A stretch of DNA of 64,000 bases, taken from positions 208,196,001 to 208,260,000 of the forward strand of contig NC_042997.1 of the NCBI RefSeq assembly GCF_006345805.1, read 5' to 3'. The position numbers and the translations under genes were made by a program. Under the pieces are notes generated by a model. It searched no databases and was not told the origin of the DNA. It saw only the letters and a list, made by a program, of their open reading frames with translations. The DNA comes from Octopus sinensis. Its lineage: Eukaryota. Shown one piece after another: positions 1 through 61,412 of the stretch (positions are counted from its first letter, which is position 1; every line of letters begins with the position of its first letter).

Positions 1-3000
1 CAAAGTTTGGCACAAAACCAGCAATTTCAAGGGAGTGGCTGAGTCAATTACTTCAACCCCAGTGCTCAACTGCTACTTATTTTATTGACCATAAACATCT
101 CTGGAATTTTGGTTTCAAATTTTGGCACAAAACCAGCAATTTCAAGAGAGTGGCTGAGTCAATTACATCAACCCCAGTGCTCAACTGGTACTTATTTTAT
201 TCACCATAAACTTCACTGGAATTTTGGTTTCAAATTTTGGCACAAGACCAGCAATTTCAAGAGAGTGGCAAAGTCAATTACATCAACCCCAGTGCTCAAC
301 TGGTACTTATTTTATTGACCATAAACATCTCTGGAATTTTGGTTTCAAATTTTGGCACAAAACCAGCAATTTCATGAGAGTGGCTGAGTCAATTACATCA
401 ACCCCAGTGCTCAACTGGTACTTATTTTATTCACCATAAACTTGACTGGAATTTTGGTTTCAAATTTTGGCACAAGACCAGCAATTTCAAGAGAGTGGCA
501 CAGTCAATTACATCAACCCCAGTGCTCAACTGGTACTTATTTTATTGACCATAAACATCTCTGGAATTTTGGTTTCAAATTTTGGCACAAAACCAACAAT
601 TTCAAGAGAGTGGCTGAGTCAATTACTTCAACCCCAGTGCTCAACTGCTACTTATTTTATTGACCATAAACATCTCTGGAATTTTAGTTTCAAAGTTTGG
701 CACAAAACCAGCAATTTCAAGAGAGTGGCTGAGTCAATTACTTCAACCCCAGTGCTCAACTGCTACTTATTTTATTGACCATAAACATCTCTGGAATTTT
801 GGTTTCAAATTTTGGCACATGGCCAGCAATTTCAGGAGAGGGGCAAAGTCAATTAGATCAACCCCAGTGATCAAGTGGTACTTATTTTATTGACCATTAA
901 CATCACTGGAATTTTGCTTTCAAATTTTGGCACAAGGCCAGTAATTTAAGTAGAGTGGCTACGTCAATTACATCAAACCCAGAGCTCAACTAGTACTTAT
1001 TTTATTGACCATAAACATCACTGAGATTTTGGTTTCAAATTTTGGCACAAGGACAGCAATTTCAAGAGAGTGTCCAAGTCAATTACATAAACCCCAGTGC
1101 TCAACTGGTACTTATTTTATTGACCATAAACATCACTGGAATTTTGGTTTCAAAGTTTGACACAAAACCAGCAATATCAAGAGAGTGGCTGAGTCAATTA
1201 CTTCAACCCCAGTGCTCAACTGGTACTTATTTTATTGACCATAAACATCACTGGAATTTTGGTTTCAAAGTTTGGCACAAAACCAGCAATTTCAAGAGAG
1301 TGGCTGAGTCAATTACATCAACCCCAGTGCTCAGCTGGTACTTATATTATTGACCATAAACATCACTGGAATTTTGGTTTCAAAGTTTGGCACAAAACCA
1401 GCAATTTCAAGAGAGTGGCAAAGTCAATTCCTTCAACCCCAGTGCACAACTGGTACTTATTTTATTGACCATAAACATCACTGGAATTTTGGTTTCAAAT
1501 TTTGGCACAAAACCAGCAATTTCAAGAGAGTGACTGAGTCAATTACTTCAACACCAGTGCTCAACTGGTACTTATTTTATTGACCATAAACATCTCTGGA
1601 ATTTTGGTTTCATATTTTGGCACAAGGCCAGCAATTTCAGGAGAGTGACTAAGTCAATTACATCAACCCCAGTGCTCAACTGGTACTTATTTTATTGACC
1701 ATAAACATAACTGGAATTTTGCTTGCAAATTTTGGTACAAGGCCAGCAATTTCAGGAGACTGTCTAAGTCAATTACATAAAACCCAGTGCTCAACTGGTA
1801 CTTATTTTATTGACCATAAACTTCTCTGGAATTTTGGTTTCAAATTTTGGCACAAGGCCAGCAATTTCAGGAGAGTCACTAAGTCAATTACATCAACCCC
1901 AGTGATCAACCGGTACTTATTTTATTGACCATAAACATCACTGGAATTTTGGTTTCAAATTTTGGCACAAAACCAGCAATTTCATTAGAGTGGCTAAGTC
2001 AATTACATCAACCCCAGTGCTCAACTGGTACTTATTTTACTCACCATAAACTTCACTGGAATTTTGGTTTCAAATTTTGGCACAAGAACTGCAATTTCAG
2101 GAGAGTGGCAAAGTCAATTAGATCAACCCCAGTGCTCAACTGGTACTTATTTTATTGACCATAAACATCACTGGAATTTTGCTTTCAAATTTTGGCACAA
2201 GGCCAGTAATTTAAGTAGAGTGGCTACGTCAATTACACCAACCCCAGTGCTCAACTAGTACTTATTTTATTGACCATAAACTCACTGAATTTTGGTTTCA
2301 AAGTTTGGCACAAAACCAGCAATTTCAAGAGAGTGGCTGAGTCAATTACTTCAACCCCAGTGCTCAACTGGTACTTATTTTATTGACCATAGACATCACT
2401 GGAATTTTGGTTTCAAAGTTTGGCACAAAACCAGAAATTTCAAGAGAGTGGCAAACTCAATTCCTTCAACCCCAGTGCACAACTGGTACTTATTTTATTG
2501 ACCAGAAACATTACTGGAATTTTGGTTTCAAAGTTTGGCACAAAACCAGCAAGTTCAAGAGAGTGGCTGAGTCAATTACTTCAACCCCAGTGCTCAACTG
2601 CTACTTATTTTATTGACCATAAACATCACTGGAATTTTGGTTTCAAAGTTTGGCACAAAACCAGCAATTTCAAGGGAGTGGCTGAGTCAATTACTTCAAC
2701 CCCAGTGCTCAACTGCTACTTATTTTATTGACCATAAATATCTCTGGATTTTTGGTTTCAAATTTTGGCACAAGACCAGCAATTTCAAGGGAGTGGCAAA
2801 GTCAATTACATCAACCCCAGTGCTCAACTGGTACTTATTTTATTGACCATAAACCTCTCTGGAATTTTGGTTTCAAATTTTGGCACAAAACCAGCAATTT
2901 CATGAGAGTGGCTGAGACAATTACATCAAACCCAGTGCTCAACTGTTACTTATTTTATTCACCATAAACTTCAATGGAATTTTGGTTTCAAATTTTGGCA

Positions 3001-6000
3001 CAAGACCAGCAATTTCAAGAGAGTGGCACAGTCAATTACATCAACCCCAGTGCTCAACTGGTACTTATTTTATTGACCATAAACATCTCTGGAATTTTGG
3101 TTTCAAATTTTGGCACAAAACCAGCAATTTCAAGAGAGTGGCTAAGTCAATTACTTCAACCCCAGTGCTCAACTGCTACTTATTTTATTGACCATAAACA
3201 TCTCTGGAATTTTGGTTTCAAAGTTTGGCACAAAACCAGCAAGTTCAAGAGAGTGGCTGAGTCAATTACTTCAAATCCAGTGCTCAACTGCTACTTATTT
3301 TATTGACCATAAACATCACTGGAATTTTGGTTTCAAAGTTTGGCACAAAACCAGCAATTTCAAGGGAGTGGCTGAGTCAATTACTTCAACCCCAGTGCTC
3401 AACTGCTACTTATTTTATTGACCATAAACATCTCTGGATTTTTGGTTTCAAATTTTGGCACAAGACCAGCAATTTCAAGAGAGTGGCAAAGTCAATTACA
3501 TTAACCCCAGTGCTCAACTGGTACTTATTTTATTGACCATAAACCTCTCTGGAATTTTTGTTTCAAATTTTGGCACAAAACCAGCAATTTCATGAGAGTG
3601 GCTGAGTCAATTACATCAACCCCAGTGCTCAACTGGTACGTATTTTATTGACCATAAACTTCACTGGAATTTTGGTTTCAAATTTTGGCACAAGACCAGC
3701 AATTTCAAGAGAGTGGCACAGTCAATTACATCAACCCCAGTGCTCAACTGGTACTTATTTTATTGACCATAACATCTCTGGATTTTTGGTTTAAAATTTT
3801 GGCACAAAACCAGCAATTTCAAGAGAGTGGCTATGTCAATTACTTCAACCCCAGTGCTCAACTGCTACTTATTTTATGACCATAAACATCTCTGGAATTT
3901 TGGTTTCAAAGTTTGGCACAAAACCAGCAATTTCAGAGAGTGGTGCTGAGTCAATTACTTCAACCCCAGTTCTCAACTGCTACTTATTTTATTGACCATA
4001 AACATCTCTGGATTTTTGGTTTCAAAGTTTGGCACAAAACCAGCAATTTCAATGAGAGTGGCTGAGTCAATTACATCAACCCCAGTGCTCAGCTGGTACT
4101 ATTTTATTGACCATAAACATCACTGGAATTTTGGTTTCAAAGTTTGGCACAAAACCAGCAATTCATGAGGTGGCTGAGTCAATTACATCAACCCCAGTGC
4201 TCAACTGGTACTTATTTTATTCACCATAAACTTCACTGGAATTTGGTTTCAAATTTTGGCACAAGACCAGCAATTTCAAGAGAGTGGCAAAGTCAATTAC
4301 ATCAACCCCAGTGCTCAACTGGTACTTATTTTATTGACCATAAACATAACGGGAATTTTGCTTTCAAATTTTGGTACATGGCCAGCAATTTCAGGAGAGT
4401 GGCAAAGTCATTAGATCAACCCCAGTGATCAAGGGTACTTATTTTATTGACCATAAACATCACTGGAATTTACTTTCAAATTTTGGCACAAGGCCAGCAA
4501 TTTAATTAGAGGGCTACGTCAATTACATCAAACCCAGAGCTCAACTAGTACTTATTTTATTGACCATAAACATCACTGAGATTTTGGTTTCAAATTTTGG
4601 CACAAGGACAGCAATTTCAAGAGAGTGTCCAAGTTAATTACATAACCCCAGTGTGCTCAACTGGTACTTATTTTATTGACCATAAACATCACTGGAATTT
4701 TGGTTTCAAAGTTTGGCACAAAAGCAATTTCAAGAGAGTGGCTGAGTCAATTACATCAACCCCAGTGCTCAGCTGGTACTATTTTATTGACCATAAACAT
4801 CACTGGAATTTTGGTTTCAAAGTTTGGCACAAAACCAGCAATTTCAAGAGAGTGGCAAAGTCAATTCCTTCAACCCCAGTGCACAACTGGTACTTATTTT
4901 ATTGACCATAAACATCACTGGAATTTTGGTTTCAAATTTTGGCACAAAACCAGCAATTTCAAGAGAGTGACTGAGTCAATTACTTCAACACCAGTGCTCA
5001 ACTGGTACTTATTTTATTGACCATAAACATCTCTGGAATTTTGGTTTCAAATTTTGGCACAAGGCCAGCAATTTCAGGAGAGTGACTAAGTCAATTACAT
5101 CAACCCCAGTGCTCAACTGGTACTTATTTTATTGACCATAAACATAACTGGAATTTTGCTTGCAAATTTTGGTACAAGGCCAGCAATTTCAGGAGACTGT
5201 CTAAGTCAATTACATAAAACCCCAGTGCTCAACTGGTACTTATTTTATTGACCATAAACATCTCTGGAATTTGGTTTCAAATTTTGGCACAAGGCCAGCA
5301 ATTGCAGGAGAGTGACTAAGTCAATTACATCAACCCCAGTGATCAACCGGTACTTATTTTTTGACCATAACCATCACTGGAATTTTGGTTTCAAATTTTT
5401 GCACAAAAAACAGCAATTCATGAGTGTGGCTGAGTCAATTACATCAACCCCAGTGCTCAATGGTACTTTTTTTACTCACCATAAACTTCACTGGAATTTT
5501 GGTTTCAAATTTGGCACAGAACTGCAATTTCAGGAGAGTGGCAAAGTCAATTAGATCAACCCCAGTGCTCAATGGTACTTATTTTATTGACATAAACATC
5601 ACTGGAATTTTGCTTTCAAATTTTGGCACAAGGCCAGTAATTTAAGTAGAGTGGCTACGTCAATTACATCAACCCCAGAGCTCGACTAGTACTTATTTTA
5701 TTGACCATAACGTCACTGAGATTTTGGTTTCAAAGTTTGGCACAAAACCAGCAATTTCAAGAGAGTGGCTGAGTCAATTACATCAACCCCAGTGCTCAGC
5801 TGGTACTTATTTTATTGACCATAAACATCACGGGAATTTTGGTTTCAAAGTTTGGCACAAAACCAGCAATTTCAAGAGAGTGGCTGAGTCAATTACTTCA
5901 ACCCCAGTGCTCAACTGGTACTTATTTTATTGACCATAAACATCACTGGAATTTTGGTTTCAAAGTTTGGCACAAAACCAGCAATTTCAAGAGAGTGGCA

Positions 6001-9000
6001 AACTCAATTCCTTCAACCCCAGTGCACAACTGGTACTTATTTTATTGACCAGAAACATTACTGGAATTTTGGTTTCAAAGTTTGGCACAAAACCAGCAAT
6101 TTCAAGAGAGTGGCTGAGTCAATTACTTCAACACCAGTGCTCAACTGGTACTTATTTTATTGACCATAAACATCTCTGGAATTTTGGTTTCAAATTTTGG
6201 CACAAGGCCAGCAATTTCAGGAGAGTGACTAAGTCAATTACATGAACCCCAGTGATCAACTGGTACTTATTTTATTGACCATAAACCTCACTGGAATTTT
6301 GGTTTCAAAGTTTGGCACAAAATCAGCAATTTCAAGAGAGTGGCAAAGTCAATTCCTTCAACCCCAGTGCACAACTGGTACTTATTTTATCGACCATAAA
6401 CATCACTGGAATTTTGACTCCAAATTTTGGCACAAGGCCAGCAATTTCAGGAGAGTGTCCAAGTCATTCACATTAACCCCAGTGCTCAAGTGGTACCTAT
6501 TTTATTGACCATAAACATCACTGGAATTTTGCTTTCAAATTTTAGCACAAGGCCAGGAATTTCAGGACATTGGCTAAGTCAATTACATCAACCCCAGTGC
6601 TCAAGTGGTACTTATTTTATTGACCATAAACATCACTGGAATTTTGGTTTCAAATTTTGGCACAAGGGCAGCAATTTCAGGAGAGTGTTCAAGTCAATTA
6701 CATCAACCCCAGTGCTCAACTGGTACCTATTTTATTGACCATAAACATCTCTGGAACTTTGCTTTCAAATTTTGGCACAAGGCCAGGAATGTCAGGAGAG
6801 TGGCAAAGTCAATTACATCAACCCCAGTGCTCAACTGGTACTTATTTTATTGACCATAAACATAACTGGAATTTTGCTTTCAAATTTTGGTACAAGGCCA
6901 GCAATTTCAGGAGAGTGGCAAAGTCAATTAGATCAACCCCAGTGCTCTACTGGTACTTATTTTATTGACCATAAACATCACTGGAATTTTGCTTTCAAAT
7001 TTTGGCACAAGGCCAGTAATTTAAGTAGAGTGGCTAAGTCAATTACATCAACCCCAGAGCTCAACTAGTACTTATTTTATTGACCATAAACATCACTGAG
7101 ATTTTGGTTTCAAATTTTGGCACAAGGCCAGCAATTTCAGGAGAGTGTCTAAGTCAATTACATAAACCCCAGTGCTCAACTGGTACTTATTTTATTGACC
7201 ATAAACATCACTGGAATTTTGGTTTCAAAGTTTGGCTCAAAACCAGCAATTTCAAGAGAGTGGCTGAGTCAATTACTTCAACCCCAGTGCTCAACTGGTA
7301 CTTATTTTATTGACCATAAACATCTCTGGAATTTTGGTTTCAAATTTTGGCACAAGGCCAGCAATTTCAGGAGAGTGTCCAAGTCAATTACATTAACCCC
7401 AGTGCTCAAGTGGTACTTATTTTATTGACCATAAACATCACTGGAATTTTGGTTTCAAAGTTTGGCACAAGGCCAGCAATTTCAGGAGAGTGACTAAGTC
7501 AATTACATGAACCCCAGTGATCAACTGGTACTTATTTTATTGACCATAAACCTCACTGGAATTTTGGTTTCAAAGTTTGGCACAAAACCAGCAAGTTCAA
7601 GAGAGTGGCAAAGTCAATTCTTTCAACCCCAGTGCACAACTGGTACTTATTTTATTGACCATAAACATCACTGGAATTTTGCTTTCAAATTTTGGCACAA
7701 GGCCAGCAATTTCAGGAGAGTGTCCAAGTCAATTACATTAACCCCAGTGCTCAAGTGGTACTTATTTTATTGACCATAAACATCACTGGAATTTTGGTTT
7801 GAAATTTTGGCACAAGGGCAGCAATTTCAGGAGAGTGTCTAAGTCAATTACATCAACCCCAGTGCACCACTGGTACTTTTTTTATTGACCATAAACATCA
7901 CTGGCATTTTGCTTTCAAATTTTGGCAAAAGGCCAGCAATTTCAGGAGAGTGTACAAGTCAATTACATCAACCCCAGTGCTCAACTGGTACTTATTTTAT
8001 TGACCATAAACATCTCTGGAATTTTGGTTTCAAATTTTGGCACAAAACCAGCAATTTCAAGAGAGTGGCTGAGTCAATTACATCAACCCCAGTGCTCAGC
8101 TGGTACTTATTTTACTGACCATAAACATCACTGGAATTTTGGTTTCAAAGTTTTGCACAAAACCAGCAATTTCAGGACATTGGCTAAGTCAATTACATCA
8201 ACCCCAGTGCTCAACTGGTACTTATTTTATTGACCATAAACATCACTGGAATTTTGGTTTCAAAGTTTGGCACAAAACCAGCAATTTCAAGAGAGTGGCT
8301 GAGTCAATTACTTCAACCCCAGTGCTCAACTGCTACTTATTTTATTGACCATAAACATCACTGGAATTTTGCTCCCATATTTTGGCACAAGGCCAGCAAT
8401 TTCAGGAGAGTGTCCAAGTCAATTACATTAACCCCAGTGCTCAACTGGTACCTATTTTATTGACCATAAACATCACTGGAATTTGGGTTTCAAATTTTGG
8501 CACAAAACCAGAAATTTCATGGGAGTGGCTAAGTCAATTACTTCAACCCCAGTGCTCAACTGGTACTTATTTTATTGACCATAAACATCACTGGAATTTT
8601 GGTTTCAAATTTTGGCACAAGGCCAGCAATTTCAGGAGAGTGTCCAAGTCAATTACATTAACCCCAGTGCTCAAATGGTACCTATTTTATTGACCATAAA
8701 CATCACTGGAATTTTGGTTTCAAATTTTGGCACAAAACCAGCAATTTCAAGAGAGTGTCCAAGTCAATTACTTCAACCCCAGTGCTCAACTGGTACTTAT
8801 TTTATTGACCATAAACATCACTGGAATTTTGGTTTCAAATTTTGGCACAAGGCCAGCAATTTCAGGAGAATAGCTAAGTCAATTACATCAACCCCAGTGC
8901 TCAACTGGTACTTATTTTATTGACCATAAACATCTCTGGAATTTTGTTTTCAAAATTTGGCACAAGGCCAGCAATTTCAGGAGAGTGGCTAAGTCAATTA

Positions 9001-9733
9001 CATCAACCCCAGTGCTCAACTGGTACTTATTTTATTGACCATAAACATCACTGGAATTTTGCTTTCAAATTTTGGCACAAGGCCAGCAATTTCAGGAGAA
9101 TGGCTAAGTCAATTACATCAAACCCAGTGCTCAACTGGTACTTATTTTATTCACCATAAACATCACTGGAATTTTCCTTTCAAATTTTGGCACAAGGCCA
9201 GTAATTTAAGTAGAGTGGCTAAGTCAATTACATCAACCCCAGTGCTCAACTGGTACTTATTTTATTGACCATAAACATCACTGAGATTTTGGTTTCAAAT
9301 TTTGGCACAAGGCCAGCAATTTCAGGAGAGTGTCTAAGTCAATTACATCAACCCCAGTGCACAACTGGTACTTATTTTATTGACCACAAACATCACTAAA
9401 ATTTCGCTTTCAAATTTTGGCACAAGGCCAGCAATTTCAGGAGAGTGTCTCTGTCAATTACATCAACCCCAGTGCTCAACTGGTACTTATTTTATTGACC
9501 ATAAACATCACTGGAATTTTGGTTTCAAATTTTGGCACAAGGCCTGCAATTTCAGGAGAGTGGCTAAGTCAATTACATCAACCCCAGTGCTCAACTGGTA
9601 CTTATTTTATTGACCATAAACATCACTGGAATTTTGGTTTCAAATTTTGGCACAAGGCCTGCAATTTTGAAACAGTGTCTAAGTCAAGTAGATTGACTCC
9701 AGTGCTCAACTGGTACTTATTTTATTGACCATA
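1..9733. repeat. 115-bp tandem satellite, about 84-85 monomers, running off the left edge; monomer derived from a SINE 3' half (SINE sense is the minus strand)
   Basis: Monomer about ttattgaccataaacatcactggaattttggtttcaaattttggcacaaggccagcaatttcaggagagtggctaagtcaattacatcaaccccagtgctcaactggtacttatt repeats every 115 nt. The many 77-aa and 103-aa ORFs are artefacts of this period. Confidence 0.97.
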
Positions 9734-9802
9734 ATTAAAAGAATGATAATAATTGATTCTGAAAGGTAGACGAGACAAAGATGGGAGAAAAAAATTACTT
9801 AC

Positions 9803-10036: not shown

Positions 10037-10546
10037 CTGCAATAAATACAGTGAATGGAAATAAATAACAGATTAATTTCAACTCTTAAATGACTTTAGA
10101 CGAACAAATTTAAAAATATGGAAAAAAAAAAAAACTTTGAATGTGTGCTGATGAGGTTTAATAAAGCTGAAATGGAACCATCAACAGATATTCTGGTAAT
10201 AATAAACTCTCCTATGATAAAACATGGTTACTCTTCTCGTTATTTATATTCTACCGAAAGAAGACAAAAACTTTCTGACTCAAAAACTAAGTGAAAATAA
10301 AAGAGACGTGATACTCTCCCCTGAAGTACATAGATTTTCCCTTCCTCTCTCTCTCTTTCACTGCTATAATAGCAAGTCCAGCAAGCAACAAACACATGGA
10401 GATAGATTAAATTTTGGTAAAAGAATCAAACTGAAGTCAATTTACTGACGTTTTAACACATTTTACTTTTAAATGATTTTGAGAATTCTTCAAATATGGA
10501 GATTTTAGCATTAAAATGCAGTTCCAATTATTTAACAACTCCATAT

Positions 10547-10983
10547 AGGCACAGGTGTGGCTGTGTGGTAAGATGGTTGCTTCCCAGCCATATGGTTCTG
10601 GGTTCAGTCCCACTGTGTAGCACTTGGAACAAATGTATTCTAATATAGCCTTGGGTTGACCAAAGCCTTATGAGTGGATTTGGTAGATGAAGACTAAAAG
10701 AAGCCATCTGTCTGTCTGTTAGTGTCTCCGTGCTTGTTGTAAATGAGTGTCCCTGTCATACAAGCAGTGTCCTTCATTTCCAATCTTCCTTAAAACATGT
10801 CTGGTGACTGGGAAACATTACCTTACTTGGAAATAGGTGAAGGTTGGCAACATGAAGGGCATCCACATGGTTCCAGGTTCAGTCCCACAGCATGGCATCT
10901 TGGGCAAGTGTCTCCTACTATAGCCTCAGGCCAACCAAAGCCTTGTGAGTGGATCTGGTAGGCAGGAAATGAAAGAAACCCGT

Positions 10984-11541: not shown

Positions 11542-11765
11542 ACATGGCGGAAAGCTATTTGCGTTTATTGTAAGTTAATATATTTTTGCCGTCGTATTAT
11601 TATCTCTGTTATTCTCTACTGTTTGTCTACCTGTTTTGTATATTGCTGTCTAACTGTCAAAGTCAGCCCTCGTGCGAGGACTTCGCGTTGGTGTTCCCCC
11701 CTCCGTGGGGGAAAAATATCATTTATCTTGAATTTACCAAGGGCTTGTTAAGCCAACTGTTCGAG

Positions 11766-13118
11766 ATGGAATCCCCCATCTCTTATTCTCCCGTGACGAG
11801 TGAAGAGGAGTCTCCGGCGATGTCGCCAAGGAAAAAAGAGGCGGTGTCGCCAAAGAAAAAAGAGGCTATGTCGCCAAAGAAAAAGGAAAACCAAGCACCA
11901 GCTCCAGCAAAAAAATTCTCTGAAGTGGCCGGAAAAAAGATCAAAAAAATAAATGTGGAAGATTTGAAAAAATATGCGGACTGTGTCACAAAAGAGGGCA
12001 CGGAAGTGACAGTGGTCACAAACGTCCAAAAACACGATGAAATAGAAAAAAAAAGAATAATCTATAAGACATTTAACACGACGACAAAAATGATACAAAA
12101 AATTGAAGAAAAAAAAATAGAGAATTGTCTAAAACCATTAATGGACAAGATAACTTAGATTAACAGAGGAAAGAGATACGGCACAGTGGAGGTGCATTTT
12201 ACTACAGAGGAGATAGCAAAAAAACTATCTATGGAGCCGATTAAAGCGGAGAACATTGTTCTCCTCCCCTTGTATAGAGGGAAAAGAACATCGAGAATCA
12301 CGATGAACAACATTCCCCCAGAGGCAGATGCCAAATGTCTGGTGGCAGCAGTGATGGTAGGCCTGGAGGAAAAAATAAACATCCTCCAGGCCACAGTGGA
12401 GGAAGAGGAATTTTGGAAAGGGCAGAAAATAGTAATAGCCATTCAGGCGGAAGTTCAAACACTGGAGGAGATTCCAGAAACTTTAAAAATAAGTGAAGAA
12501 GAGAGAATAACAGTTTTCGTGGAGGGCAGAAAGCCGAGGTGCTTCGGCTGCGGCAAGAAGGGTCATGTAAGGGCGGAATGCCAACCCCAACCCAAACCGC
12601 AGGAAGCACCTCAGCCAGGTGGAAAAGAAGATAAAGTGTCACCAGAAGCAGCGCCGGGCGGCCCAGAAGGGACGACTGAAGGTGTGGAGGTGACGGAGAC
12701 AGCAGAACCAGCGGCGGAGGAAAATAAGAGCGAGGAAAAGAAAAATGAGGAGGGGTGGGCAAAAATCACCAGAAAAAAAAGAAAAACGGAAACCACCCCT
12801 CCCAGAGTGAACTTAAAAAAGAAAAGAGAGTCGATGACCTCATATATGGCCGTGAAGGCATCAAACAACAGACTCGGGAACGTATTGGCAGCTATGGCCA
12901 AAGTGGAGAGAATAGGGAAAAAGAACAACTATGTAGTTTACAGAATAGGCCGGAAGGATTACGGGCGGATAAAGTCCGAATTCTTCCATGACGTAGGCCC
13001 ACTTAGAATGGATGTGACATCTCCACATATATTCGAGGGCCTACGTCAGACTCCCCCACGAGGCCCTGAAAAAGAGTTAAACAAAGAAGAAAAAGAGAAA
13101 ACCGAACCACTGATATAA
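11766..13118 (+). pseudogene. Tx1 ORF1 (gag-like, CX2CX4HX4C zinc knuckle), 450 codons, interrupted by one in-frame TAG at 12156-12158
   Basis: Track ORFs 11586-12158 and 12186-13118 are in the same frame and read …LMDKIT*INRGKRYGTVEVHF…. The knuckle is CFGCGKKGHVRAEC. The likely start is ATG 11766 (MESPISYSP). Confidence 0.85.
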
Positions 13119-13127
13119 AGGTAAGTA

Positions 13128-16100
13128 ATGGATTGCATTTATGTTGGTTGTTTGAATGTGCGCGGCCTGGGAGCAGGCTGGAAGCAAGGTCGCTTCCTGC
13201 ATGATATCAGGTCGCGTAATTTAGATGTTATTGTTGCTACAGAAACCCGGTTAGAGGGGCCAAGAGGTCTACTCCCGCTGTTTGACGGCTACGAGAGTTT
13301 TTTCTCTCCTGGCAGTCCTACTGGCAGAAGTGGGGTGTTGGTCCTAATAAAAAGAAACCGGGTTTCTGAGAAAAAGTTAATTTTTGCAGATCCAGAAGGT
13401 AGGCTGGTCGTCATGGATTTGACGTTCAGTAACGGTAAAGTTATCAGACTGGTTGCAATTTACGCACCCAACCATACAGGGCAAAGTGATTATTTTCGTG
13501 AACTAGAAAACTTTCTTGGTACTTCACATTCATTAGTTGTGCTAGGAGACTTTAACACAATTTGCAAAGCGGATGTAGATTGTGTTGGCTCGCGTTCAGA
13601 TAGAAAAGGTAACAGTGGCTTCATGGAACTGCTAAGCCGCTTTGAGCTAGCAGATCCTTATAGGCTGGAATTTCCGAACGCTCCATTGTGGACATGGTCA
13701 AACAGCGATGGATCTTCCAGGTCATATTTAGATAGAATACTAATTAGAAAAGTAGACAGTAAAATAGCTAAGTGTCCACAGTTTTACCCGATCAGCTACA
13801 GTGATCATAAAATGGTCACTTGTAAGCTTGACATAGATAAGGTTAAAAATAGAGGATCCGGTTACTGGAAACTTAATACGTCCCTTTTGGCGATTAAGGA
13901 GTACAAAGACCGGATTAGGAATATAATTCAGAGGGCACTATCTGGTACCATCATTAATAACAAATGGTGGTACGCCCTCAAACGAGCCATCAAGTTTGAG
14001 TCAATTAGATATATCATAGGAGTAGTGGCTAGAGAGGCTAGAAGGGAAACTACTCTAGTTAAGGAATTAGAGGAAGCCTTGAAAACTGGCTCTGCGGCTC
14101 AGGTGGCGTCCAAGAGACTGGTGTTAAACCAGCACTTCGAGGCCAAACACATGGGCTGCATTGTCAGGGCTAGAATCCGCCATATGGGTTGTGAAGGAAT
14201 CAAAGCCGTGAGATGGGCCCGAGTGGTGGAAGCACAGCATGGTAACGATGCCATGATTCGATCTTTGACGAACCAACAAGGTGAGTTGATAAACGAGCCC
14301 GAGGAGATGTGTGAGGCCTTTCAGGAGCACTTCGCTCAGCTTTTCGGTGAGTGCGGCGGACTGGATAGGAGGAGGGCCTTTACGGACCTACTCGACGGGC
14401 TGCCGTGCTTATCGGGGCGAGATGCGGAGGGCTGTGAAGGGCCAATCACGCCTGAGGAAGTGGTTGAGGCAATGGCGGACTGCGGCGCAGGCAAGGCGCC
14501 GGGTTTGGATGGTCTACCCTATGAGTTATATAAGAGTATGCCAGACTTGTTCGGGCACCTACTGGCGGAGGTCTATGCGAACTGGCAGCAGAACGGGCTT
14601 ATACCCAGATCTGTGCGCCGGGGAGTAGTGACACTCGTCAGAAAGGACCCGAGCAAGGGGGAGTGCATTGATAATTTCAGGCCCATCACTCTGCTAAACA
14701 CAGAGTTGAAGATTTTGGCCAAAGTGTTATCGAAAAGATTGGCGCGTGTCGCGGATGGTCTGATCGGGGAGGCACAGACATGTGCCGTTCCGGGCAGAAC
14801 CATTCAGGATAATCTCCATCTAATGCGGTACACTATAGAGGGGTTTAATAGTGATTCTGGCAAGGGTGGGGCACTGGTCCATTTAGACCAATCTAAAGCA
14901 TTTGATAGGGTCGACCATCGGTACCTGGTATCTGCCCTGGCACAGTTCGGGCTGAGCCTTGGCTTCCTCAGGTGGATTATACAAATTTACGATAACATCG
15001 ACTCGGTAGTTCGGGTGAACGGCTTCTTGTCGAAGCCATTCAACATCAAGCGCTCGGTTCGTCAAGGGTGTCCGCTCTCCCCGCTTTTGTACATGATGGC
15101 TCTTGAGCCATTACTGCGAAAACTGAGCGGCATCCCGAGACAGCCAGGTAGTGGAAAATCAGTGTCAGCGTACGCGGATGACATCACCATCATCGTAACC
15201 GAAATGGACCACCTATGTAAAGTAGGCAAGGCCATAGAGGTTTACGAGACGGTGACAGGAGCAAAAGTTAATCGCGAAAAGTCAGTCGGCTTGCAACTCG
15301 GCACCTGGAGAGGCAAGTCGATGCCTCCGGACAGCGTCGTGGGACGTTGGACGGAGGGTCCGATTAAATTGCTAGGGGTCTGGTTCGGTCCAGACCTCCA
15401 AATAGAGAAGAATTGGGGCGAGGTAACGAGCAGGGTGGCTGCAGTAACCAAGACCTGGTCTTGGCGGTGGCTATCCCTGAAAGGGAGGGCGGAGGTGGCC
15501 AATGTGTTTATCGCATCGGTTATCACCTACCGCCTTTCCGTCGTTCCTTGCCCTGATTCGTGGTTGATCAAGTTGGAAAGACAGCTCTTCTACTTTTTGT
15601 GGAAGAGCGGGAAACCACTTGTGAAACGCTCTACTTGCTGTCAACAACCGTTAAAGGGTGGGCTAGGGATGCCTTGGCTGATGATGCGCAGACATGCGCT
15701 GAGGTTAAGACATCTGTGGCTCTACCTGGATGGTGAACGGGTGTGGTCTCCGCTAGCAAAACTGATGTTTCCCAAGTTCACTAGTTTCGGTGGATGGGAA
15801 ACCTGGCTGAATCGTAGATCGAAACTTGGTACTTGGTACACGGAGTGTCGCAAGGCTCTCCTGCTATTCCGTCGCTCGGGTAACGCCTGCGGTGGGGGTT
15901 CCACCACATTCTTCTACAGAGGGTTGCTAGAGGCGGAATGTGAAGATACCTTGGGGGAAACCCTAGGTCTCGACGATAATCAGCTGGCCAGTCTGTTCCG
16001 ACGTACGTTCAAGCCGAAGACACTGGACAACTTCCAGAAGTCTCTGGCATGGCAATGCTACAGAGGAGCTCTACCTGTTCGGGATAAACTCGCAAGGCAC

Positions 16101-16523
16101 GGTGGTCAAGACAGTCCGATATGTCCAAGATGCGGGCGGGATAGGGAAACCGTCCCGCACGCTATTGTTCATTGTAGGGACATGACTGAGGTGTGGGTTT
16201 ATGCCGAACAGCTGTTGTCAAGTACACGAAGAGTACAGCTGTCGACTGAGTCGATTACAAAAATTGACCCACCGGATTTCCTCGCGAATGAAGGTAAGTT
16301 TCGTTTTCTCGTTGTAGTAGCAATTGCGAAAGAGGTGATATGGAAGACGAGAATGAAAGGTCTACAGTCAGACAAGTTCATCTCCGGCCCTGGTTTGATG
16401 AATTATTTCATCTTTCACCTGAAAAGGAAGATAGGGCTGGAGAGAATATGCCTGACTAAGAGAGTGTATGAAGAACGATGGAAAGATGTAGCACGAAAGT
16501 TGCGAGTGAATGATACAACATAA
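13128..16523 (+). CDS. Tx1/L1 ORF2, 1131 aa: apurinic-like endonuclease, reverse transcriptase and C-terminal Zn finger; uninterrupted
   Basis: APE motifs CLNVRGL, ATETR, LGDFNT, SYLDRILI and SDHK. RT motifs KAPGLDG, NFRPITLLN, LDQSKAFDRVDH, VRQGCPLSPLLY and YADD. Zn finger CPRCGRDRETVPHAIVHC. Confidence 0.96.
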   Translation: MDCIYVGCLNVRGLGAGWKQGRFLHDIRSRNLDVIVATETRLEGPRGLLPLFDGYESFFSPGSPTGRSGVLVLIKRNRVSEKKLIFADPEGRLVVMDLTFSNGKVIRLVAIYAPNHTGQSDYFRELENFLGTSHSLVVLGDFNTICKADVDCVGSRSDRKGNSGFMELLSRFELADPYRLEFPNAPLWTWSNSDGSSRSYLDRILIRKVDSKIAKCPQFYPISYSDHKMVTCKLDIDKVKNRGSGYWKLNTSLLAIKEYKDRIRNIIQRALSGTIINNKWWYALKRAIKFESIRYIIGVVAREARRETTLVKELEEALKTGSAAQVASKRLVLNQHFEAKHMGCIVRARIRHMGCEGIKAVRWARVVEAQHGNDAMIRSLTNQQGELINEPEEMCEAFQEHFAQLFGECGGLDRRRAFTDLLDGLPCLSGRDAEGCEGPITPEEVVEAMADCGAGKAPGLDGLPYELYKSMPDLFGHLLAEVYANWQQNGLIPRSVRRGVVTLVRKDPSKGECIDNFRPITLLNTELKILAKVLSKRLARVADGLIGEAQTCAVPGRTIQDNLHLMRYTIEGFNSDSGKGGALVHLDQSKAFDRVDHRYLVSALAQFGLSLGFLRWIIQIYDNIDSVVRVNGFLSKPFNIKRSVRQGCPLSPLLYMMALEPLLRKLSGIPRQPGSGKSVSAYADDITIIVTEMDHLCKVGKAIEVYETVTGAKVNREKSVGLQLGTWRGKSMPPDSVVGRWTEGPIKLLGVWFGPDLQIEKNWGEVTSRVAAVTKTWSWRWLSLKGRAEVANVFIASVITYRLSVVPCPDSWLIKLERQLFYFLWKSGKPLVKRSTCCQQPLKGGLGMPWLMMRRHALRLRHLWLYLDGERVWSPLAKLMFPKFTSFGGWETWLNRRSKLGTWYTECRKALLLFRRSGNACGGGSTTFFYRGLLEAECEDTLGETLGLDDNQLASLFRRTFKPKTLDNFQKSLAWQCYRGALPVRDKLARHGGQDSPICPRCGRDRETVPHAIVHCRDMTEVWVYAEQLLSSTRRVQLSTESITKIDPPDFLANEGKFRFLVVVAIAKEVIWKTRMKGLQSDKFISGPGLMNYFIFHLKRKIGLERICLTKRVYEERWKDVARKLRVNDTT

Positions 16524-16770
16524 ATGTAAAACCAAACGTAACCAAAAGTATCAGTGGGGAGGCGGGGCTCGTGAGGTCCGAACTAAACCCGCACCCACTC
16601 CACCCGTAATGTCTTCCGGTCTGTTCCATCATTCGATTTCTTGCTATTTTTGTAATTCTCTGTAAATTTTTAAAATTCGCTTTTTTGGTAAAACCCATCC
16701 GTGTGTCTGACCCCATCATCAGATTGTATTGTCCCATCTATGCTCGCCCCTTGTGGGTAATAATAAAACA

Positions 16771-17095
16771 ACATGGAGGAAAGCACCTTCGAAAAGTGTC
16801 TTGGTGCGACTATGAAAGGTATCTAATCAGAGGTGGTAAATTCGCCACAATAGAAGCAAGGTTCGAGTCAACGGAGCGTGCAAGGGAGTACTCGACTCGA
16901 ACTTGCAAAGTGGAAATATTTTATTTTTACCTTTATATCTGGGACGTAGGATGTCTCAGAAAAGAATTTAAAATGCCCCCCCCCCCACCCAGAAGTAGAG
17001 GTAGGCTGGATTGTAGCCACACTTCTATACAAGAGGGAGGACAAGATACAATTGATCGAAATTACAAGAGACGGGCTAACAATTCCAGTCTGTTA
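16771..17095 (+). pseudogene. Right piece of the older Tx1-family ORF1
   Basis: With frameshifts it reads MEESTFEKCLGATMK / YLIRGGKFATIEARFESTERAREYST / GRRMSQKRI*NAPP..PEVEVGWIVATL. This aligns with IEEKKIENCLKPLMDK / *INRGKRYGTVEVHFTTEEIAKKLSM / GKRTSRITMNNIPPEADAKCLVAAV. Confidence 0.75.
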
Positions 17096-18718: not shown

Positions 18719-19449
18719 CTGAAAATCAAAACAGCAGAAGAAATTGAGAAAATGTCATTATTTATGAGTGGAGGGCATGGTTGTGTTGGTGTAGAACCAG
18801 GTCAAAGACATTCCGACCATAAACACCCCCAAGTGTCCTTCCTTGTTTAAGATGTTAGGTGTTACATGAAGAAAATTTAACTGCCTTTTCTAGCAGATCA
18901 AGTCATCACTTAGAGGCCCCTTTGTTTGCTCTATAACCAAGAGGATTGTGAGGTTCCCTGTACAATTAATTGGTTCTAGTTCAATCCCACTGTCCAACAG
19001 CACCTTGAGCAAGTATCTTCTACCGCAGCCTCAAGATGACCAGAGCCTTGCGACTGATATTTGGAAGAGAGAAACAGTGGACATCACAGGATTTGTGTGT
19101 GTGTGAGGTATCGCCAAAAGGCAATACTTGGAGGAGGCAGTACTCAATAAAAAGCTTTATAACTAGCAGACCGTTATGTAAATAGAGAAAGATTCTTCGG
19201 ATTTGAGGTGACCTGTTGTCATTAAACATCAAGGCAACATTCCTGCTGATTAATATAGAATGCAATAATTATGATGATGATGATGATGATAATGATGACG
19301 ATGATGATTTCTTTTATTTGCCACAGGGCGTAAGTGAGGGGCATTACTCGGACATTTAACAATCTGTGTGTGTGGGGGGAGGGTTCACATAAAGGATGAA
19401 GGGAAAGAAAGCACCAATCAATGAACCCCACAGATCCAGGATCACCCTG

Positions 19450-20420
19450 ACCATGAAGGGCACGAGTCCTCACCCCGGTGTTGTTCTCCACTCACCAGGT
19501 GCATGCCTAAAGGAGCTTCATTCACCCTAATCATTCTTACCAGTCAGCCACCTTCCCTCTCCACCCTCACTTTCTTTTCCAAATGGAACTTTAAAACAAA
19601 AAAGGGAAGTGGGTTTAACTGAAGTGGAAGGTGTCTTTCCTTAATTTTTTTTGGCCTCGTCCACAACACAACCCCTTTCTCTCGGGAGAGAAACATCATC
19701 TGCCCTGCTTTGTTAAAGGACAGTGATGGGGTAATCCTCAAAACAGACTCAACTCATAGCCAGATCCTTCCTATATGTGCCAACAGCTGTTCAACATGAC
19801 TCTGCAGATCAGAAATGCTTGGACACTGTACGAGGGCATCTCAGTCAGTCCCATCCATAGAGTTTATGCCAGCGCTGCTCCTCGGTAGCCAGACCAAGAA
19901 TTTCTGGAAACTACCTGTGTTAATTCCTGGCCTGAACGTCCTCCAAAGCAGACCAGATGCTTCATACTGGTCAACGCCTAATGTTTTCCTGAGAATGTCA
20001 TTGCTCTTAGCCAACAATAGATTTCTATATATTGCTAACATGGAACTTCCATGACCACAATACTTGATTGCCAGTGAATGCCAGATGACATTCCAGATGC
20101 CATGACTCTAATCCTGGTCTTCTTTTTCTTGATCCCGGACTGCAGCTTCCACCCATCCCCCCACTTTTTCATGCTAGCATAAGTTAGACGGAGACTTTAA
20201 TTTACAAAGGATTTCACAGAACAATATTCGGAGAGAGGGATCATGTGTTTCTCTATCCATATTTCATGCCTCCATTTCCTGTATCCTAGTTTGGTAGACT
20301 CACTTCTTCCATAACATTCCATTATGGCCCTTTTATCATTCTGAGATCATCTTCTTCTCAACTTTGCAGAGGTATTCGAATAAACGACAAGGTCCACCTG
20401 GATGTACAGTAGGTTGCAAA
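19450..20420 (-). mobile_element. Highly degenerate DIRS-like (YR retrotransposon) RT/RNase H remnant
   Basis: The minus-strand peptide LLLAKSNDILRKT…RPGINTGSFQ… has the spacing of the DIRS RT segment after YLDD (LLLAxS…G..IN..KS). It has many stops and frameshifts. Confidence 0.4.
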
Positions 20421-51060: not shown

Positions 51061-51598
51061 AATTGACCATTGACTACACAGTAGTTCTTCCTCCCTTTGA
51101 CAGGTCTTAGCATTTGTCCCGCAGGGTGTCCAACAACCACCCTCCTCACCAAGAAAGTTTGATGGGGTTGCCAGTTTAGTCGCCGACGACCCGACCATGT
51201 GACAGGTTGTATTGGATTGCACTGGGGTCGATATAATCGACTTAATCCATTTGTCTGTCCTTGTTTGTCCTCTCTGTGTTTAACTCCTTGTGGGTAGTAA
51301 AGAAATAGGTTGTATTGGATTACCTGTTACCAGTAGAGCTCAAGAGCGACCTGACATCAACTACAATACACAAAATATTCTAACATTTTTTTATAGACAC
51401 AATTCCTAATACTTTATATTTGAGAGATGAGGAATTATGAACATTATTTACATTATTTACATTTGACGGATATTTGTCCTCATCTTATTGTTAACACACA
51501 TTTCTGCTGAAGTACTCTCCAGACGTCATCAGGTGTCCTGGAGGAATTTCGAACCTGGATTCTCATTCCTAAGCTATTTTCCGATATTATTATTATTA

Positions 51599-59495: not shown

Positions 59496-61412
59496 AAGGC
59501 GGCGAGCTGGCAGAAACGTTAGCACGCCGGGCGAAATGCTTAGCAGTATTTCCTCTGCAGCTACGTTCTGAGTTCAAATTCCGCAGAGGTCGAATTTGCC
59601 TTTCATCCTTTCGGGGACGATTAAATAAGTACCAGTTACGCACTGGAGTCGATATAATCGACTGAATCCGTTTATCTGTCCTTGCTTGTCCCCTCTGTGT
59701 GTGGCCCTTTGTGGGTAGTAAAGAAATAGGTATTTCGTCTGCCGTTTCGTACTGAGTTCAAATTCCGCAGAGGTCGAATTTGCCTTTCATCCTTTCGGGG
59801 ACGATTAAATAAGTACCAGTTACGCACTGGAGTCGATATAATCGACTTAATCCGTTTGTCTGTCCTTACTTGTCCCCTCTGTGTGTAGCCCTTTGTGGGT
59901 AGTAAAGAAATAGGTATTTCGTCTGCCGTTACGTTCTGAGTTCAAATTCCGCAGAGGTCGAATTTGCCTTTCATCCTTTCGGGGTCGATTAAATAAGTAC
60001 CAATTACGCACTGGAGTCCATATAATCGACTTAATCCGTTTAACTGTCCTTGCTTGTCCCCTCTGTGTGTAGCCCTTTGTGGGTAGTAAAGAAATAGGTA
60101 TTTCGTCTGCCGTTTCGTACTGAGTTCAAATTCCGCAGAGGTCGAATTTGCCTTTCATCCTTTCGGGGTCGATTAAATAAGTACCAGTTACGCACTGGAG
60201 TCGATATAATCGACTTAATCCGTTTATCTGTCCTTGCTTGTCCCCTCTGTGTGTAGCCCTTTGTGGGTAGTAAAGAAATAGGTATTTCGTCTGCCGTTTC
60301 GTACTGAGTTCAAATTCCGCAGAGGTCGAATTTGCCTTTCATCCTTTCGGGTTCGATTAAATAAGTACCAGTTACGCACTGGAGTCGATATATCGACTTA
60401 ATCCTTTATATCTGTCCTTGCTTGTCCCCTCTGTGTGTAGCCCTTTGTGGGTAGTAAAGAAATAGGTATTTCGTCTGCCGTTTCGTACTGAGTTCAAATT
60501 CCGCAGAGGTCGAATTTGCCTTTCATCCTTTCGGGTTCGATTAAATAAGTACCAGTTACGCACTGGAGTCGATATAATCGACTTAATCCGTTTATCTGTC
60601 CTTGCTTGTCCCCTCTGTGTGTAGCCCTTTGTGGGTAGTAAAGAAATAGGTATTTCGTCTGCCGTTTCGTACTGAGTTCAAATTCCGCAGAGGTCGAATT
60701 TGCCTTTCATCCTTTCGGGGTCGATTAAATAAGTACCAGTTACGCACTGGAGTCGATATAATCGACTTAATCCGTTTATCTGTCCTTGCTTGTCCCCTCT
60801 GTGTGTAGCCCTTTGTGGGTAGTAAAGAAATAGGTATTTCGTCTGCCGTTTCGTACTGAGTTCAAATTCCGCAGGGTCGATTTGCCTTTCATCCTTTCGG
60901 GTTCGATTAAATAAGTACCAGTTACGCACTGGAGTCGATATAATCGACTTAATCTCCGTTATTTTTATCTGTCCTTGCTTGTCCCCTCTGTGTGTAGCCC
61001 TTTGTGGGTAGTAAAGAAATAGGTACTTCGTCTGCCGTTTCGTACTGAGTTCAAATTCCGCAGAGGTCGAATTTGCCTTTCATCCTTTCGAGGTCGATTA
61101 AATAAGTACCAGTAACGCACTGGGGTCGATATAATCGACTTAATCATCCGTTTAACTGTCCTTGCTTGTCCCCTCTGTGTGTAGCTCTCTGTGGGTAGTA
61201 AAGAAATAGGTATTTCGTCTGCCGTTACGTACTGAGTTCAAATTCCGCAGAGGTCGACTTTGCCTTTCATCCTTTCGGGGTCGATTAAATAAGTACCAGT
61301 AACGCACTGGGGTCGATATAATCGACTTAATCCGTTTAACTGTCCTTGCTTGTCCCCTCAATGTTTAGACCCTTGTGGGCAGTAAAGAAATAAGAAACGT
61401 TAGCACGCCGGT
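59496..61412 (+). repeat. tRNA-derived SINE whose 3' 184 bp is tandemly repeated 10 times
   Basis: One head (aaggcggcgagctggcagaaacgttagcacgccgg, A-box). The B-box gagttcaaattcc recurs at 59570, 59754, 59938, 60122, 60306, 60490, 60674, 60858, 61047 and 61234. Confidence 0.95.

What the first reader, a model, noticed from the sequence alone, without database searches (positions are those of the whole stretch)
16697..16769. A SINE 3' tail matches the 3' UTR of the intact Tx1/L1 element: a candidate Tx1-driven tRNA SINE
Seen: the LINE end atccgtgtgtctgacc-ccatcatcaga-ttgtattgtcccatctatgctcgccccttgtgggtaataataaaa aligns with the SINE tail atccgtttgtctgtcc—ttgtttgtcccctctgtgtttagccccttgtgggtagtaaagaaa (for example 59850-59911 and 51244-51306). 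The match spans about 65 nt with one gap of about 11 nt. Established: SINEs borrow the 3' end of a partner LINE so that its RT recognises them. Shared tails are typical of CR1/L2/RTE partners and rare for the L1/Tx1 clade, where crocodilian SINEU is the example I know. Inference: this Tx1 family mobilises the SINE, and a copy with an intact ORF2 lies in the same window.
Basis: partly seen in the sequence, partly recalled or inferred. Interest (0 to 1): 0.85.

Follow-up and report, generated by a model that had tools for sequence, protein, structure and literature searches.

The report
Octopus SINE tail matches L1-like LINE
The last ~62 bases of a short octopus retroposon (SINE) are truly related to the last ~73 bases of a neighbouring L1-type LINE with an intact reverse-transcriptase gene. 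This makes that LINE lineage the likely engine copying the SINE, an arrangement common for other LINE types but rare for L1-type ones.

Summary
The LINE end at 16697-16769 aligns end to end with the SINE tail. Identity is 46-48 of 60 positions against single copies and 51/61 (84%) against a consensus, with one 11-nt gap and two 1-nt indels. No shuffle or genomic control reached this score, and a SINE-tail profile hits the LINE tail at E=1.9e-5.

The tail belongs to the LINE. A 14-nt target-site duplication (13/14 identical) brackets the element at 11556-16769. A second, decayed related LINE at 19307-20150 (minus strand) has a homologous 3' end, including the CAGATTGT segment that the SINE lacks.

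The same SINE occurs in Octopus vulgaris with 14-15-nt duplications, similar to the LINE's. Sister SINE subfamilies share the head and core but carry other tails, and they diverge exactly where the LINE similarity begins.

- ORF1 carries an in-frame stop.
- Tx1 clade membership and a tRNA origin of the head could not be confirmed.
- The SINEU/Tx1 link in the literature rests on shared insertion targets, not shared tails.
- This LINE copy is probably a cousin of the tail donor, because the 3'-terminal repeats differ.

Mobilisation of the SINE by this LINE lineage is inferred, not shown. Only one copy of the LINE family could be examined.

The parts
11542..11555 (+). 5' copy of the target-site duplication of LINE-A (ACATGGCGGAAAGC)
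   Evidence: 13/14 identical to 16771-16784. It is the only 14-mer with at most one mismatch between the 35 nt around the LINE end and the 2 kb upstream. Only 2 of 300 shuffles gave any such match.
11556..16769 (+). LINE-A: a 5.2-kb L1-superclade non-LTR retrotransposon (5' UTR, ORF1, ORF2, 3' UTR)
   Evidence: Bounded by the TSD. ORFs, Pfam domains. No other copy of this family is present in the window.
11766..13118 (+). ORF1 (about 450 codons, CX2CX4HX4C zinc knuckle), interrupted by one in-frame TAG at 12156-12158
   Evidence: Single-frame translation. The knuckle matches retroviral nucleocapsid knuckles only weakly, and there is no match to mammalian L1 ORF1p.
13128..16523 (+). ORF2, 1131 aa, uninterrupted: AP-endonuclease, reverse transcriptase (YADD present) and C-terminal zf-RVT
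   Evidence: Best solved-structure match is human LINE-1 ORF2p, E=4.6e-65 over residues 6-867. Closest database relative is 58% identical (P0001).
16524..16769 (+). 3' UTR of LINE-A
   Evidence: Runs from the ORF2 stop to the TSD.
16697..16769 (+). LINE-A 3' tail homologous to the SINE tail (this is the finding)
   Evidence: 84% identity to the SINE tail consensus and E=1.9e-5 with the tail profile.
16771..16784 (+). 3' copy of the LINE-A target-site duplication (ACATGGAGGAAAGC)
19307..20150 (-). LINE-B: decayed, 5'-truncated member of the same L1-like lineage, followed by a (TCA)n microsatellite
   Evidence: tblastn gives 30% identity to the LINE-A ORF2 C-terminus (E=1e-13) and 40% to P0001. 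Sequence shown.
19307..19400 (-). LINE-B 3' tail, collinear with the LINE-A tail (ATCC.T, CAGATTGT, TGTCC, GCCC.TGTGG, AATAA) and ending in AAAAGAAAT like the SINE
   Evidence: Alignments: 7 of 5000 shuffles and 0 of 8838 genomic windows reach the score. It is not significantly similar to the SINE on its own (593 of 5000 shuffles).
51219..51306 (+). Dispersed, 5'-truncated SINE copy (88 nt) carrying the tail, flanked by a perfect 15-nt TSD AGGTTGTATTGGATT (51204-51218 and 51307-51321)
59498..59727 (+). Full-length SINE unit (head, core, 62-nt tail at 59666-59727) that opens the tandem array
   Evidence: and the alignment with the O. vulgaris copies.
59546..61392 (+). 184-bp tandem array (10 units) of the SINE lacking about 46 nt of the head; every unit carries the tail

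Best explanation
One subfamily of an abundant octopus SINE is built from three parts: a head with pol III-box-like motifs, a core shared with sister subfamilies, and a 62-nt 3' module. That module descends from the 3' end of the 3' UTR of an L1-superclade LINE lineage, probably what octopus annotations call L1-Tx1.

The copy at 11556-16769 (LINE-A, ORF2 intact) is the closest available member of that lineage. It is probably a cousin of the actual tail donor and not the donor itself.

Inferred mechanism: the SINE RNA presents the LINE-like tail and A-rich terminus. ORF2p of this lineage accepts it in trans as it accepts its own RNA, which is 'stringent-type' 3'-end recognition. The endonuclease nicks the target and target-primed reverse transcription copies the SINE. 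This produces duplications of about 14-15 nt and occasional 5' truncation.

Shown here: tail homology, ownership of the tail by the LINE, modular tail exchange among SINE subfamilies, matching TSD lengths, and an intact ORF2.

Inferred: tail recognition by ORF2p and trans-mobilisation.
For: 1. The tail match is end to end and far above the controls.
2. It sits at the extreme 3' end of both elements.
3. A TSD brackets LINE-A including the tail (p about 0.01).
4. LINE-B, a related decayed LINE, has a homologous tail that includes CAGATTGT within the segment missing from the SINE. The tail is therefore native to the LINE lineage and the SINE form is derived.
5. The SINE terminus AAAGAAAT matches LINE-B and the internal blocks match LINE-A. 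This mix of characters is what a donor inside this lineage would give.
6. In the window and in 66 kb of octopus DNA, 8 SINE-related hits with other tails stop at profile positions 121-128. The LINE similarity begins at position 124, so the LINE-like part is a discrete swapped module.
7. TSDs are 15 nt (window copy) and 14-15 nt (O. vulgaris L008) for the SINE, against 14 nt or more for LINE-A.
8. The 88-nt SINE copy is 5'-truncated, a hallmark of LINE-mediated copying.
9. ORF2 is open and carries endonuclease, RT (YADD) and zf-RVT domains.
10. L1-Tx1 is among the recently active LINE groups in O. vulgaris, where nearly all SINEs are unclassified and no LINE partner is given for them (PMC13282606).
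Against: - Only one copy of the LINE-A family could be examined, so there is no family consensus.
- The LINE and SINE tails differ by an 11-nt indel and 16% substitutions.
- The 3'-terminal repeats differ: LINE-A ends GTAATAATAAAAC, the SINE ends GTAGTAAAGAAAT(AAGAAAT)n. Established stringent pairs usually share the terminal repeat.
- No thermodynamically significant or covarying stem-loop was found (fold z-scores from -1.0 to +0.5). The consensus fold gives only a 4-pair mini-hairpin GCCC-YUUGU-GGGU with no compensatory change.
- The 6-bp hairpin UCUGA...UCAGA in the LINE-A tail is destroyed by the SINE's 11-nt deletion.
- TSD comparison rests on 2 SINE copies and 1 LINE copy.
- No age profiles or target-site logos could be made.
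- ORF1 of this copy is interrupted.
Confidence: 0.6

Rival explanations
1. Historic relic. The tail was once borrowed from this LINE lineage, but the SINE is now driven by another LINE, or by any LINE that accepts A-rich ends. The shared tail would then have no present function.
For: The terminal repeats of LINE-A and the SINE differ, there is an 11-nt indel, and no conserved RNA structure was found. Octopus genomes hold several more abundant active LINE groups: RTE, Dong-R4 and CR1 (PMC13282606). Sister SINE subfamilies use other tails.
Against: SINE copies with this tail have perfect 14-15-nt TSDs, so they are young. LINE-A also has an intact ORF2 and a nearly perfect TSD. TSD lengths match. 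The tail blocks are well conserved among SINE copies from two sources.
Confidence: 0.2
2. Reverse direction or copy-specific chimera. The LINE acquired its end from the SINE, for example because reverse transcription began on a SINE RNA and switched template to the LINE RNA. The tail would then be private to this copy or to a young sub-lineage.
For: Only one LINE-A copy was seen. A TSD would also bracket such a chimera. The 84% identity of the LINE tail to the SINE consensus is not far below the most diverged SINE copy.
Against: The LINE tail contains 11 nt absent from all 14 SINE tails examined. That segment continues into CAGATTGT, which is shared with the independent LINE-B tail. The LINE-A and LINE-B tails are collinear over about 90 nt (7 of 5000 shuffles reach the score).
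Confidence: 0.1
3. A 5'-truncated SINE copy happened to insert, or was mis-assembled, immediately after a tailless LINE.
For: 5'-truncated SINE copies of similar size exist (51219-51306).
Against: The TSD of the 5.2-kb element lies directly after the tail, and no separate TSD surrounds the 73-nt segment. The 11-nt insertion is shared in part with LINE-B. The terminal repeat differs from every SINE copy.
Confidence: 0.04
4. Chance resemblance between two pyrimidine-rich, A-terminated sequences.
For: blastn does not report the match, and one stringent local alignment was marginal.
Against: 0 of 5000 shuffles and 0 of 8838 genomic windows reach the score. The profile E-value is 1.9e-5, with full-length, terminus-to-terminus collinearity.
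Confidence: 0.01

Closest known systems
Maize ZmSINE2/ZmSINE3 with LINE1-1_ZM, and Chlamydomonas SINEX-3_CR with L1-1_CR: the L1-clade SINE/LINE pairs with a shared 3' end (Ohshima 2012, PMC3472496)
   Same: An L1-superclade LINE and a SINE share about 50-80 nt at the extreme 3' end. The tail is conserved among related LINEs of the lineage. The proposed interpretation is stringent-type 3'-end recognition inside a clade better known for relaxed poly(A) recognition.
   Different: Those pairs are in plants and a green alga, while this one is in an animal (octopus). The maize tail has a clear hairpin with conserved loop and flank, and none is demonstrable here. Those elements end in poly(A), whereas here the LINE ends in AATAAAAC and the SINE in (AAGAAAT)n.
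Crocodilian SINEU with Tx1-Mar (Kojima 2015, PMC4494074)
   Same: A non-autonomous retroposon is attributed to a LINE of the Tx1 branch of the L1 superclade.
   Different: The SINEU link rests on shared target preference (Mariner-N4_AMi) and concurrent ages. SINEU elements end in poly(A) and share snRNA-derived 5' ends, not 3' tails, with Tx1 families. Here the link is a shared 3' tail, and no target specificity is visible.
UnaSINE1/UnaL2 and other stringent-type pairs of the L2, CR1 and RTE clades (Kajikawa and Okada 2002; reviewed in PMC3747384)
   Same: The SINE 3' module is copied from the partner LINE's 3' UTR end. SINE subfamilies with one core but different tails fit the tail-exchange ('mosaic') model also described for bivalve SINEs (PMC11481361).
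   Different: Those partners belong to other LINE clades, share the terminal short repeat, and have an experimentally required stem-loop. None of this is shown here.
Alu or B1 with mammalian L1 (relaxed type)
   Same: An L1-type ORF2p (AP endonuclease plus RT) is the presumed engine, and TSDs are about 15 nt.
   Different: Mammalian SINEs share only poly(A) with L1. Here 62 nt of non-repetitive tail are shared and there is no poly(A).

Membership tests
SINE (LINE-dependent short retroposon) | Short, non-coding, multi-copy and dispersed, with copies flanked by target-site duplications | tested here: met
   About 230-250 nt long. Copies occur in the window and in two O. vulgaris loci. Perfect TSDs of 15 nt (51204-51218 and 51307-51321) and 14 nt (L008 5798-5811 and 6060-6073). 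A 5'-truncated copy exists.
SINE (LINE-dependent short retroposon) | Head derived from a pol III-transcribed small RNA, with an internal promoter | tested here: inconclusive
   Box A/B-like motifs (TGGCAGAAA..., GAGTTCAAATTCC) can be read about 50 nt apart, but no RNA family is recognised.
tRNA-derived SINE | Head recognisable as a tRNA (cloverleaf or tRNA model) | tested here: not met
   ARAGORN finds nothing in the window, and nothing in three full copies even at 85% of the default thresholds. Rfam reports no tRNA hit at E up to 1. A strongly decayed tRNA origin remains possible.
Stringent-type SINE/LINE pair (shared 3' tail) | SINE 3' end homologous and collinear with the 3' terminus of the LINE 3' UTR | tested here: met
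   51/61 identical to the consensus, terminus to terminus, E=1.9e-5.
Stringent-type SINE/LINE pair (shared 3' tail) | The tail is a conserved feature of the LINE family or lineage, not of one copy | tested here: inconclusive
   The TSD shows the tail is part of the inserted unit, and related LINE-B has a homologous tail. No second copy of the LINE-A family could be obtained.
Stringent-type SINE/LINE pair (shared 3' tail) | Same 3'-terminal short repeat in the SINE and the LINE | tested here: not met
   LINE-A ends ...GTAATAATAAAAC. The SINE ends ...GTAGTAAAGAAAT, with (AAGAAAT)3 in L008. LINE-B ends ...AAAAGAAAT, like the SINE.
Stringent-type SINE/LINE pair (shared 3' tail) | Conserved stem-loop in the shared tail | tested here: inconclusive
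   Fold z-scores range from -1.0 to +0.5. The consensus fold has only 4 pairs, with one-sided changes only.
Stringent-type SINE/LINE pair (shared 3' tail) | Tail-dependent trans-mobilisation by the LINE's ORF2 protein | not testable with these tools
   This needs a retrotransposition assay.
L1 superclade of non-LTR retrotransposons | ORF2 with an N-terminal AP-type endonuclease, an RT and a C-terminal Cys/His motif, and closest similarity to L1 ORF2p | tested here: met
   Pfam Exo_endo_phos, RVT_1 and zf-RVT. Human L1 ORF2p matches at E=4.6e-65 over endonuclease plus RT, against 6e-25 for R2 over RT only.
Tx1 clade | Phylogenetic placement of ORF2 with Xenopus Tx1 and its relatives rather than with other L1 branches | not testable with these tools
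   No Tx1 reference sequence was available. The only pointer is a by-similarity name on a distant fungal hit (P0026), plus the fact that L1-Tx1 is the L1-like class listed among recently active LINEs in O. vulgaris.
Tx1 clade | Sequence-specific insertion (typical of many members, not universal) | tested here: inconclusive
   There is a single insertion. Its flanks are not a recognisable repeat, and no paralogous empty site was found. Two related LINEs abut trinucleotide microsatellites.

The most novel reading that the evidence does not exclude
This is an animal case of stringent-type 3'-tail sharing inside the L1/Tx1 superclade. An active octopus L1-Tx1-like lineage would recognise a specific 60-70-nt 3' end and would drive one tail-defined subfamily of the large, so far 'unclassified' octopus SINE population. 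That would extend to animals Ohshima's proposal, made for green plants, that specific 3'-end recognition was the ancestral state of L1-clade LINEs. It would also name a concrete engine for part of the octopus SINE expansion.
Probability: 0.4. Interest if true: 0.6.

Novelty: new member of a known kind. Interest (0 to 1): 0.5.

Why it matters
SINEs make up about 11-12% of the Octopus vulgaris genome. Nearly all are 'unclassified', and no LINE partner is given for them in that annotation (PMC13282606).

A shared tail identifies a candidate partner and makes the question testable in two ways. One is genome-wide, through age, TSD and target-site comparisons. The other is at the bench, with a tail-swap retrotransposition assay.

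It would also add an animal example to the very few L1-clade SINE/LINE pairs with a shared tail. [quoted passage not shown] This bears on whether specific 3'-end recognition is ancestral in the L1 superclade and was relaxed in mammals.

The mechanism class itself, SINEs borrowing LINE tails, is textbook.

Tried and rejected
- **More copies from public DNA collections.** I looked for more copies of the LINE family and the SINE. A degenerate tail pattern found nothing in metagenome or viral contigs. A SINE-core pattern found nothing in viral contigs, and a shorter SINE-core 20-mer gave only single 20-mer matches, apparently by chance, in metagenome and bacterial contigs (only the metagenome hit was checked).
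- **Protein routes to LINE-A copies.** The ORF2 protein is not on record. Its closest database relative is 58% identical, on a 3-kb contig cut 113 nt after the stop codon, before any tail could be seen.
- **More distant relatives.** The 3' UTRs of relatives at 36-38% identity (L004, L005) show no recognisable tail.
- **Route that worked.** A Tigger-like transposase in the window led to annotated Octopus proteins, and so to 66 kb of O. sinensis and O. vulgaris DNA. This yielded two more tail-bearing SINE copies but no LINE-A copy.
- **RNA structure.** No support beyond a mini-hairpin.
- **tRNA origin of the head.** No support.
- **Paralogous empty site for the LINE insertion.** None found.
- **Literature.** No paper in the library holds the sequence motifs or describes a partner LINE for octopus SINEs. 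SINEBase supplements are not held, and Albertin 2015 is not held.
- **Rejected explanations.** Chance similarity, and a SINE fragment inserted next to the LINE.

Full report
**What is at the site**

The window carries a 5.2-kb non-LTR retrotransposon at 11556-16769 on the plus strand, called LINE-A here.

- ORF2 (13128-16523, 1131 aa) is uninterrupted. It has AP-endonuclease, reverse-transcriptase and zf-RVT domains.
- Its best solved-structure match is human LINE-1 ORF2p, E=4.6e-65 across endonuclease plus RT. R2 proteins match only the RT domain, at about 1e-25.
- ORF1 (11766-13118) has a CCHC knuckle but contains one in-frame TAG at 12156-12158. The copy is therefore not fully intact.
- The 3' UTR is 16524-16769, and the finding concerns its last 73 nt.

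**Check of the observation**

The quoted SINE string is a consensus and not any one copy.

| Test | Result |
|---|---|
| End-to-end alignment to individual SINE copies | 46-48 identical of 60 positions |
| Alignment to five-copy consensus | 51/61 (84%) |
| Gaps | one 11-nt gap, two 1-nt indels |
| Dinucleotide shuffles reaching the score | 0 of 5000 |
| Genomic 73-nt windows reaching the score | 0 of 8838 |
| Tail-only profile from five SINE copies | hits 16697-16767 over profile positions 3-62 of 64, E=1.9e-5 in 130 kb; next unrelated hit E=0.64 |

blastn does not report the match, and a stringent local alignment to one array copy was marginal. Detection therefore depends on the method, but the similarity is not due to chance.

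**Does the tail belong to the LINE?**

Three results say yes.

1. A 14-nt target-site duplication brackets the whole element including the tail: ACATGGCGGAAAGC at 11542-11555 and ACATGGAGGAAAGC at 16771-16784. Only 2 of 300 shuffled controls gave any such match. No separate duplication surrounds the 73-nt segment.
2. A second, decayed LINE of the same lineage lies at 19307-20150 on the minus strand (LINE-B). It is 30% identical to the LINE-A ORF2 C-terminus and 40% to P0001. Its 3' end is collinear with the LINE-A tail through the blocks ATCC.T, CAGATTGT, TGTCC, GCCC.TGTGG and AATAA. Only 7 of 5000 shuffles and 0 of 8838 genomic windows reach that score.
3. The CAGATTGT block begins inside the 11 nt that every SINE copy lacks and runs on into the shared TTGT. 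The LINE form is therefore ancestral and the SINE form derived.

LINE-B alone is not significantly similar to the SINE, so the SINE tail is specifically LINE-A-like. However, the SINE terminus AAAGAAAT matches LINE-B (AAAAGAAAT) and not LINE-A (AATAAAAC). This mixture suggests the true donor is another member of the lineage.

**The SINE**

- In the window it appears as one 88-nt, 5'-truncated dispersed copy at 51219-51306, with a perfect 15-nt TSD.
- It also forms a 184-bp tandem array at 59546-61392, opened by a full-length unit that starts at about 59498.
- I reached annotated Octopus proteins through a Tigger-like transposase in the window. This gave 66 kb of O. sinensis and O. vulgaris DNA.
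- The same SINE with the same tail is present in O. vulgaris. L007 1524-1704 (minus strand) is one copy. L008 5812-6059 is another, with a perfect 14-nt TSD and a 3' (AAGAAAT)3 terminus. The window is therefore very probably octopod DNA.
- Six further SINE hits in those loci and two in the window share the head and core but stop at profile positions 121-128 and continue with other tails. The LINE-A similarity starts at profile position 124. The LINE-like segment is thus a discrete, exchangeable 3' module.
- A tRNA origin of the head is not confirmed.

**Mechanism**

The best reading is the classical one: a SINE subfamily acquired the 3' end of a LINE, and the LINE's ORF2 protein accepts it as a template.

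Shown:
- tail homology, and ownership of the tail by the LINE lineage;
- similar TSD lengths, 14-15 nt for the SINE and at least 14 nt for LINE-A;
- 5' truncation of a SINE copy;
- an open ORF2 with catalytic motifs.

Inferred:
- recognition of the tail by ORF2p;
- trans-mobilisation.

Against a simple 'this LINE drives this SINE':
- the 11-nt indel and the different terminal repeats;
- no demonstrable conserved stem-loop, only a 4-pair mini-hairpin;
- a single LINE copy and only 2 dispersed SINE copies with clear TSDs;
- no genome-wide ages.

**Comparison with what is known**

- Ohshima's survey found 58 SINEs with a partner LINE's tail. [quoted passage not shown] These were maize ZmSINE2/3 and Chlamydomonas SINEX-3_CR, none from animals (PMC3472496 and PMC3747384).
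- Surveys of mollusc SINE partners report CR1, L2 and Nimb-type partners, among others, and do not mention Tx1. They do not cover octopus SINEs.
- In O. vulgaris, L1-Tx1 covers 56 Mb in 80 families, 13 of them recently active. SINEs cover about 11.7% of the genome and are almost all unclassified (PMC13282606).
- Tx1 clade membership of LINE-A could not be tested here. L1-superclade membership is supported.

**Verdict**

This is a new member of a known kind, SINE/LINE pairs with a shared tail, in an unusual clade and host. Interest is moderate. The decisive test, genome-wide 3'-end consensus sequences and age and TSD profiles, could not be run with the collections available.

Noticed in passing
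window 1-9734: A 115-bp satellite of about 85 copies. On the minus strand each unit contains the SINE core (...aataagtaccagttgagcactgg...) followed by a different tail (...ggccttgtgccaaaatttgaaacc...). The same tail occurs on a SINE-like element in O. vulgaris (L007 1177-1297). This is a large satellite derived from a sister SINE subfamily.
   Followed up: partly
window 59546-61411; L007 1411-1704: The finding's SINE forms a 184-bp, 10-unit tandem array. Each tail is joined to position ~47 of the next head (...aaagaaa|taggtatttcgtctg), and the array ends in a stray head fragment at 61393-61411. A dimer with the same kind of junction occurs in O. vulgaris, so head-truncated SINE multimers form recurrently.
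   Followed up: partly
window 19250-19310 (minus strand); L006 3780-3830 (minus strand): LINE-B ends directly in a (TCA)n microsatellite. A more distant L1-like LINE in O. sinensis ends directly in (CTA)n. Either these LINEs seed 3' microsatellites or they prefer microsatellite targets, as some Tx1-clade elements do.
   Followed up: no
window 51700-53500: A Tigger-like DNA transposon fragment. Its product is about 82% identical to proteins of freshwater prawns (Macrobrachium), 83% to Octopus sinensis, about 80% to the cuttlefish Acanthosepion, and about 60% to a snake (Erythrolamprus). This patchy distribution suggests horizontal transfer.
   Followed up: no
window 12156-12158: A single in-frame TAG splits the LINE-A ORF1 into 130-aa and 320-aa parts in the same frame. 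It is a nonsense mutation, or possibly a read-through site, in an otherwise young-looking copy.
   Followed up: partly
window 16718-16736: The LINE-A tail contains a 6-bp hairpin (UCUGAcccc...aUCAGA). Its 3' arm lies in the 11 nt missing from all SINE copies. If a structure is recognised, it is not this one.
   Followed up: partly
window 10540-10700 and 10860-10980; also 47905-48000: Copies of a different SINE family, with a clearer B box (GGTTCAGTCCCAC), lie just upstream of LINE-A. The window is densely packed with several SINE families.
   Followed up: no
window 40299-40366, 47761-47853, 48621-48680: Fragments of further SINE relatives that share the head or core with the finding's SINE but have other 3' parts. 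This is consistent with modular ('mosaic') SINE evolution.
   Followed up: partly
L005 4300-4320: Downstream of the ORF2 of a distant marine-metagenome LINE relative (36% identity) lies CCCACAAGGGGG, the reverse complement of the CCCCTTGTGGG tail motif. This is probably coincidence, and the element's true 3' end is unknown.
   Followed up: no
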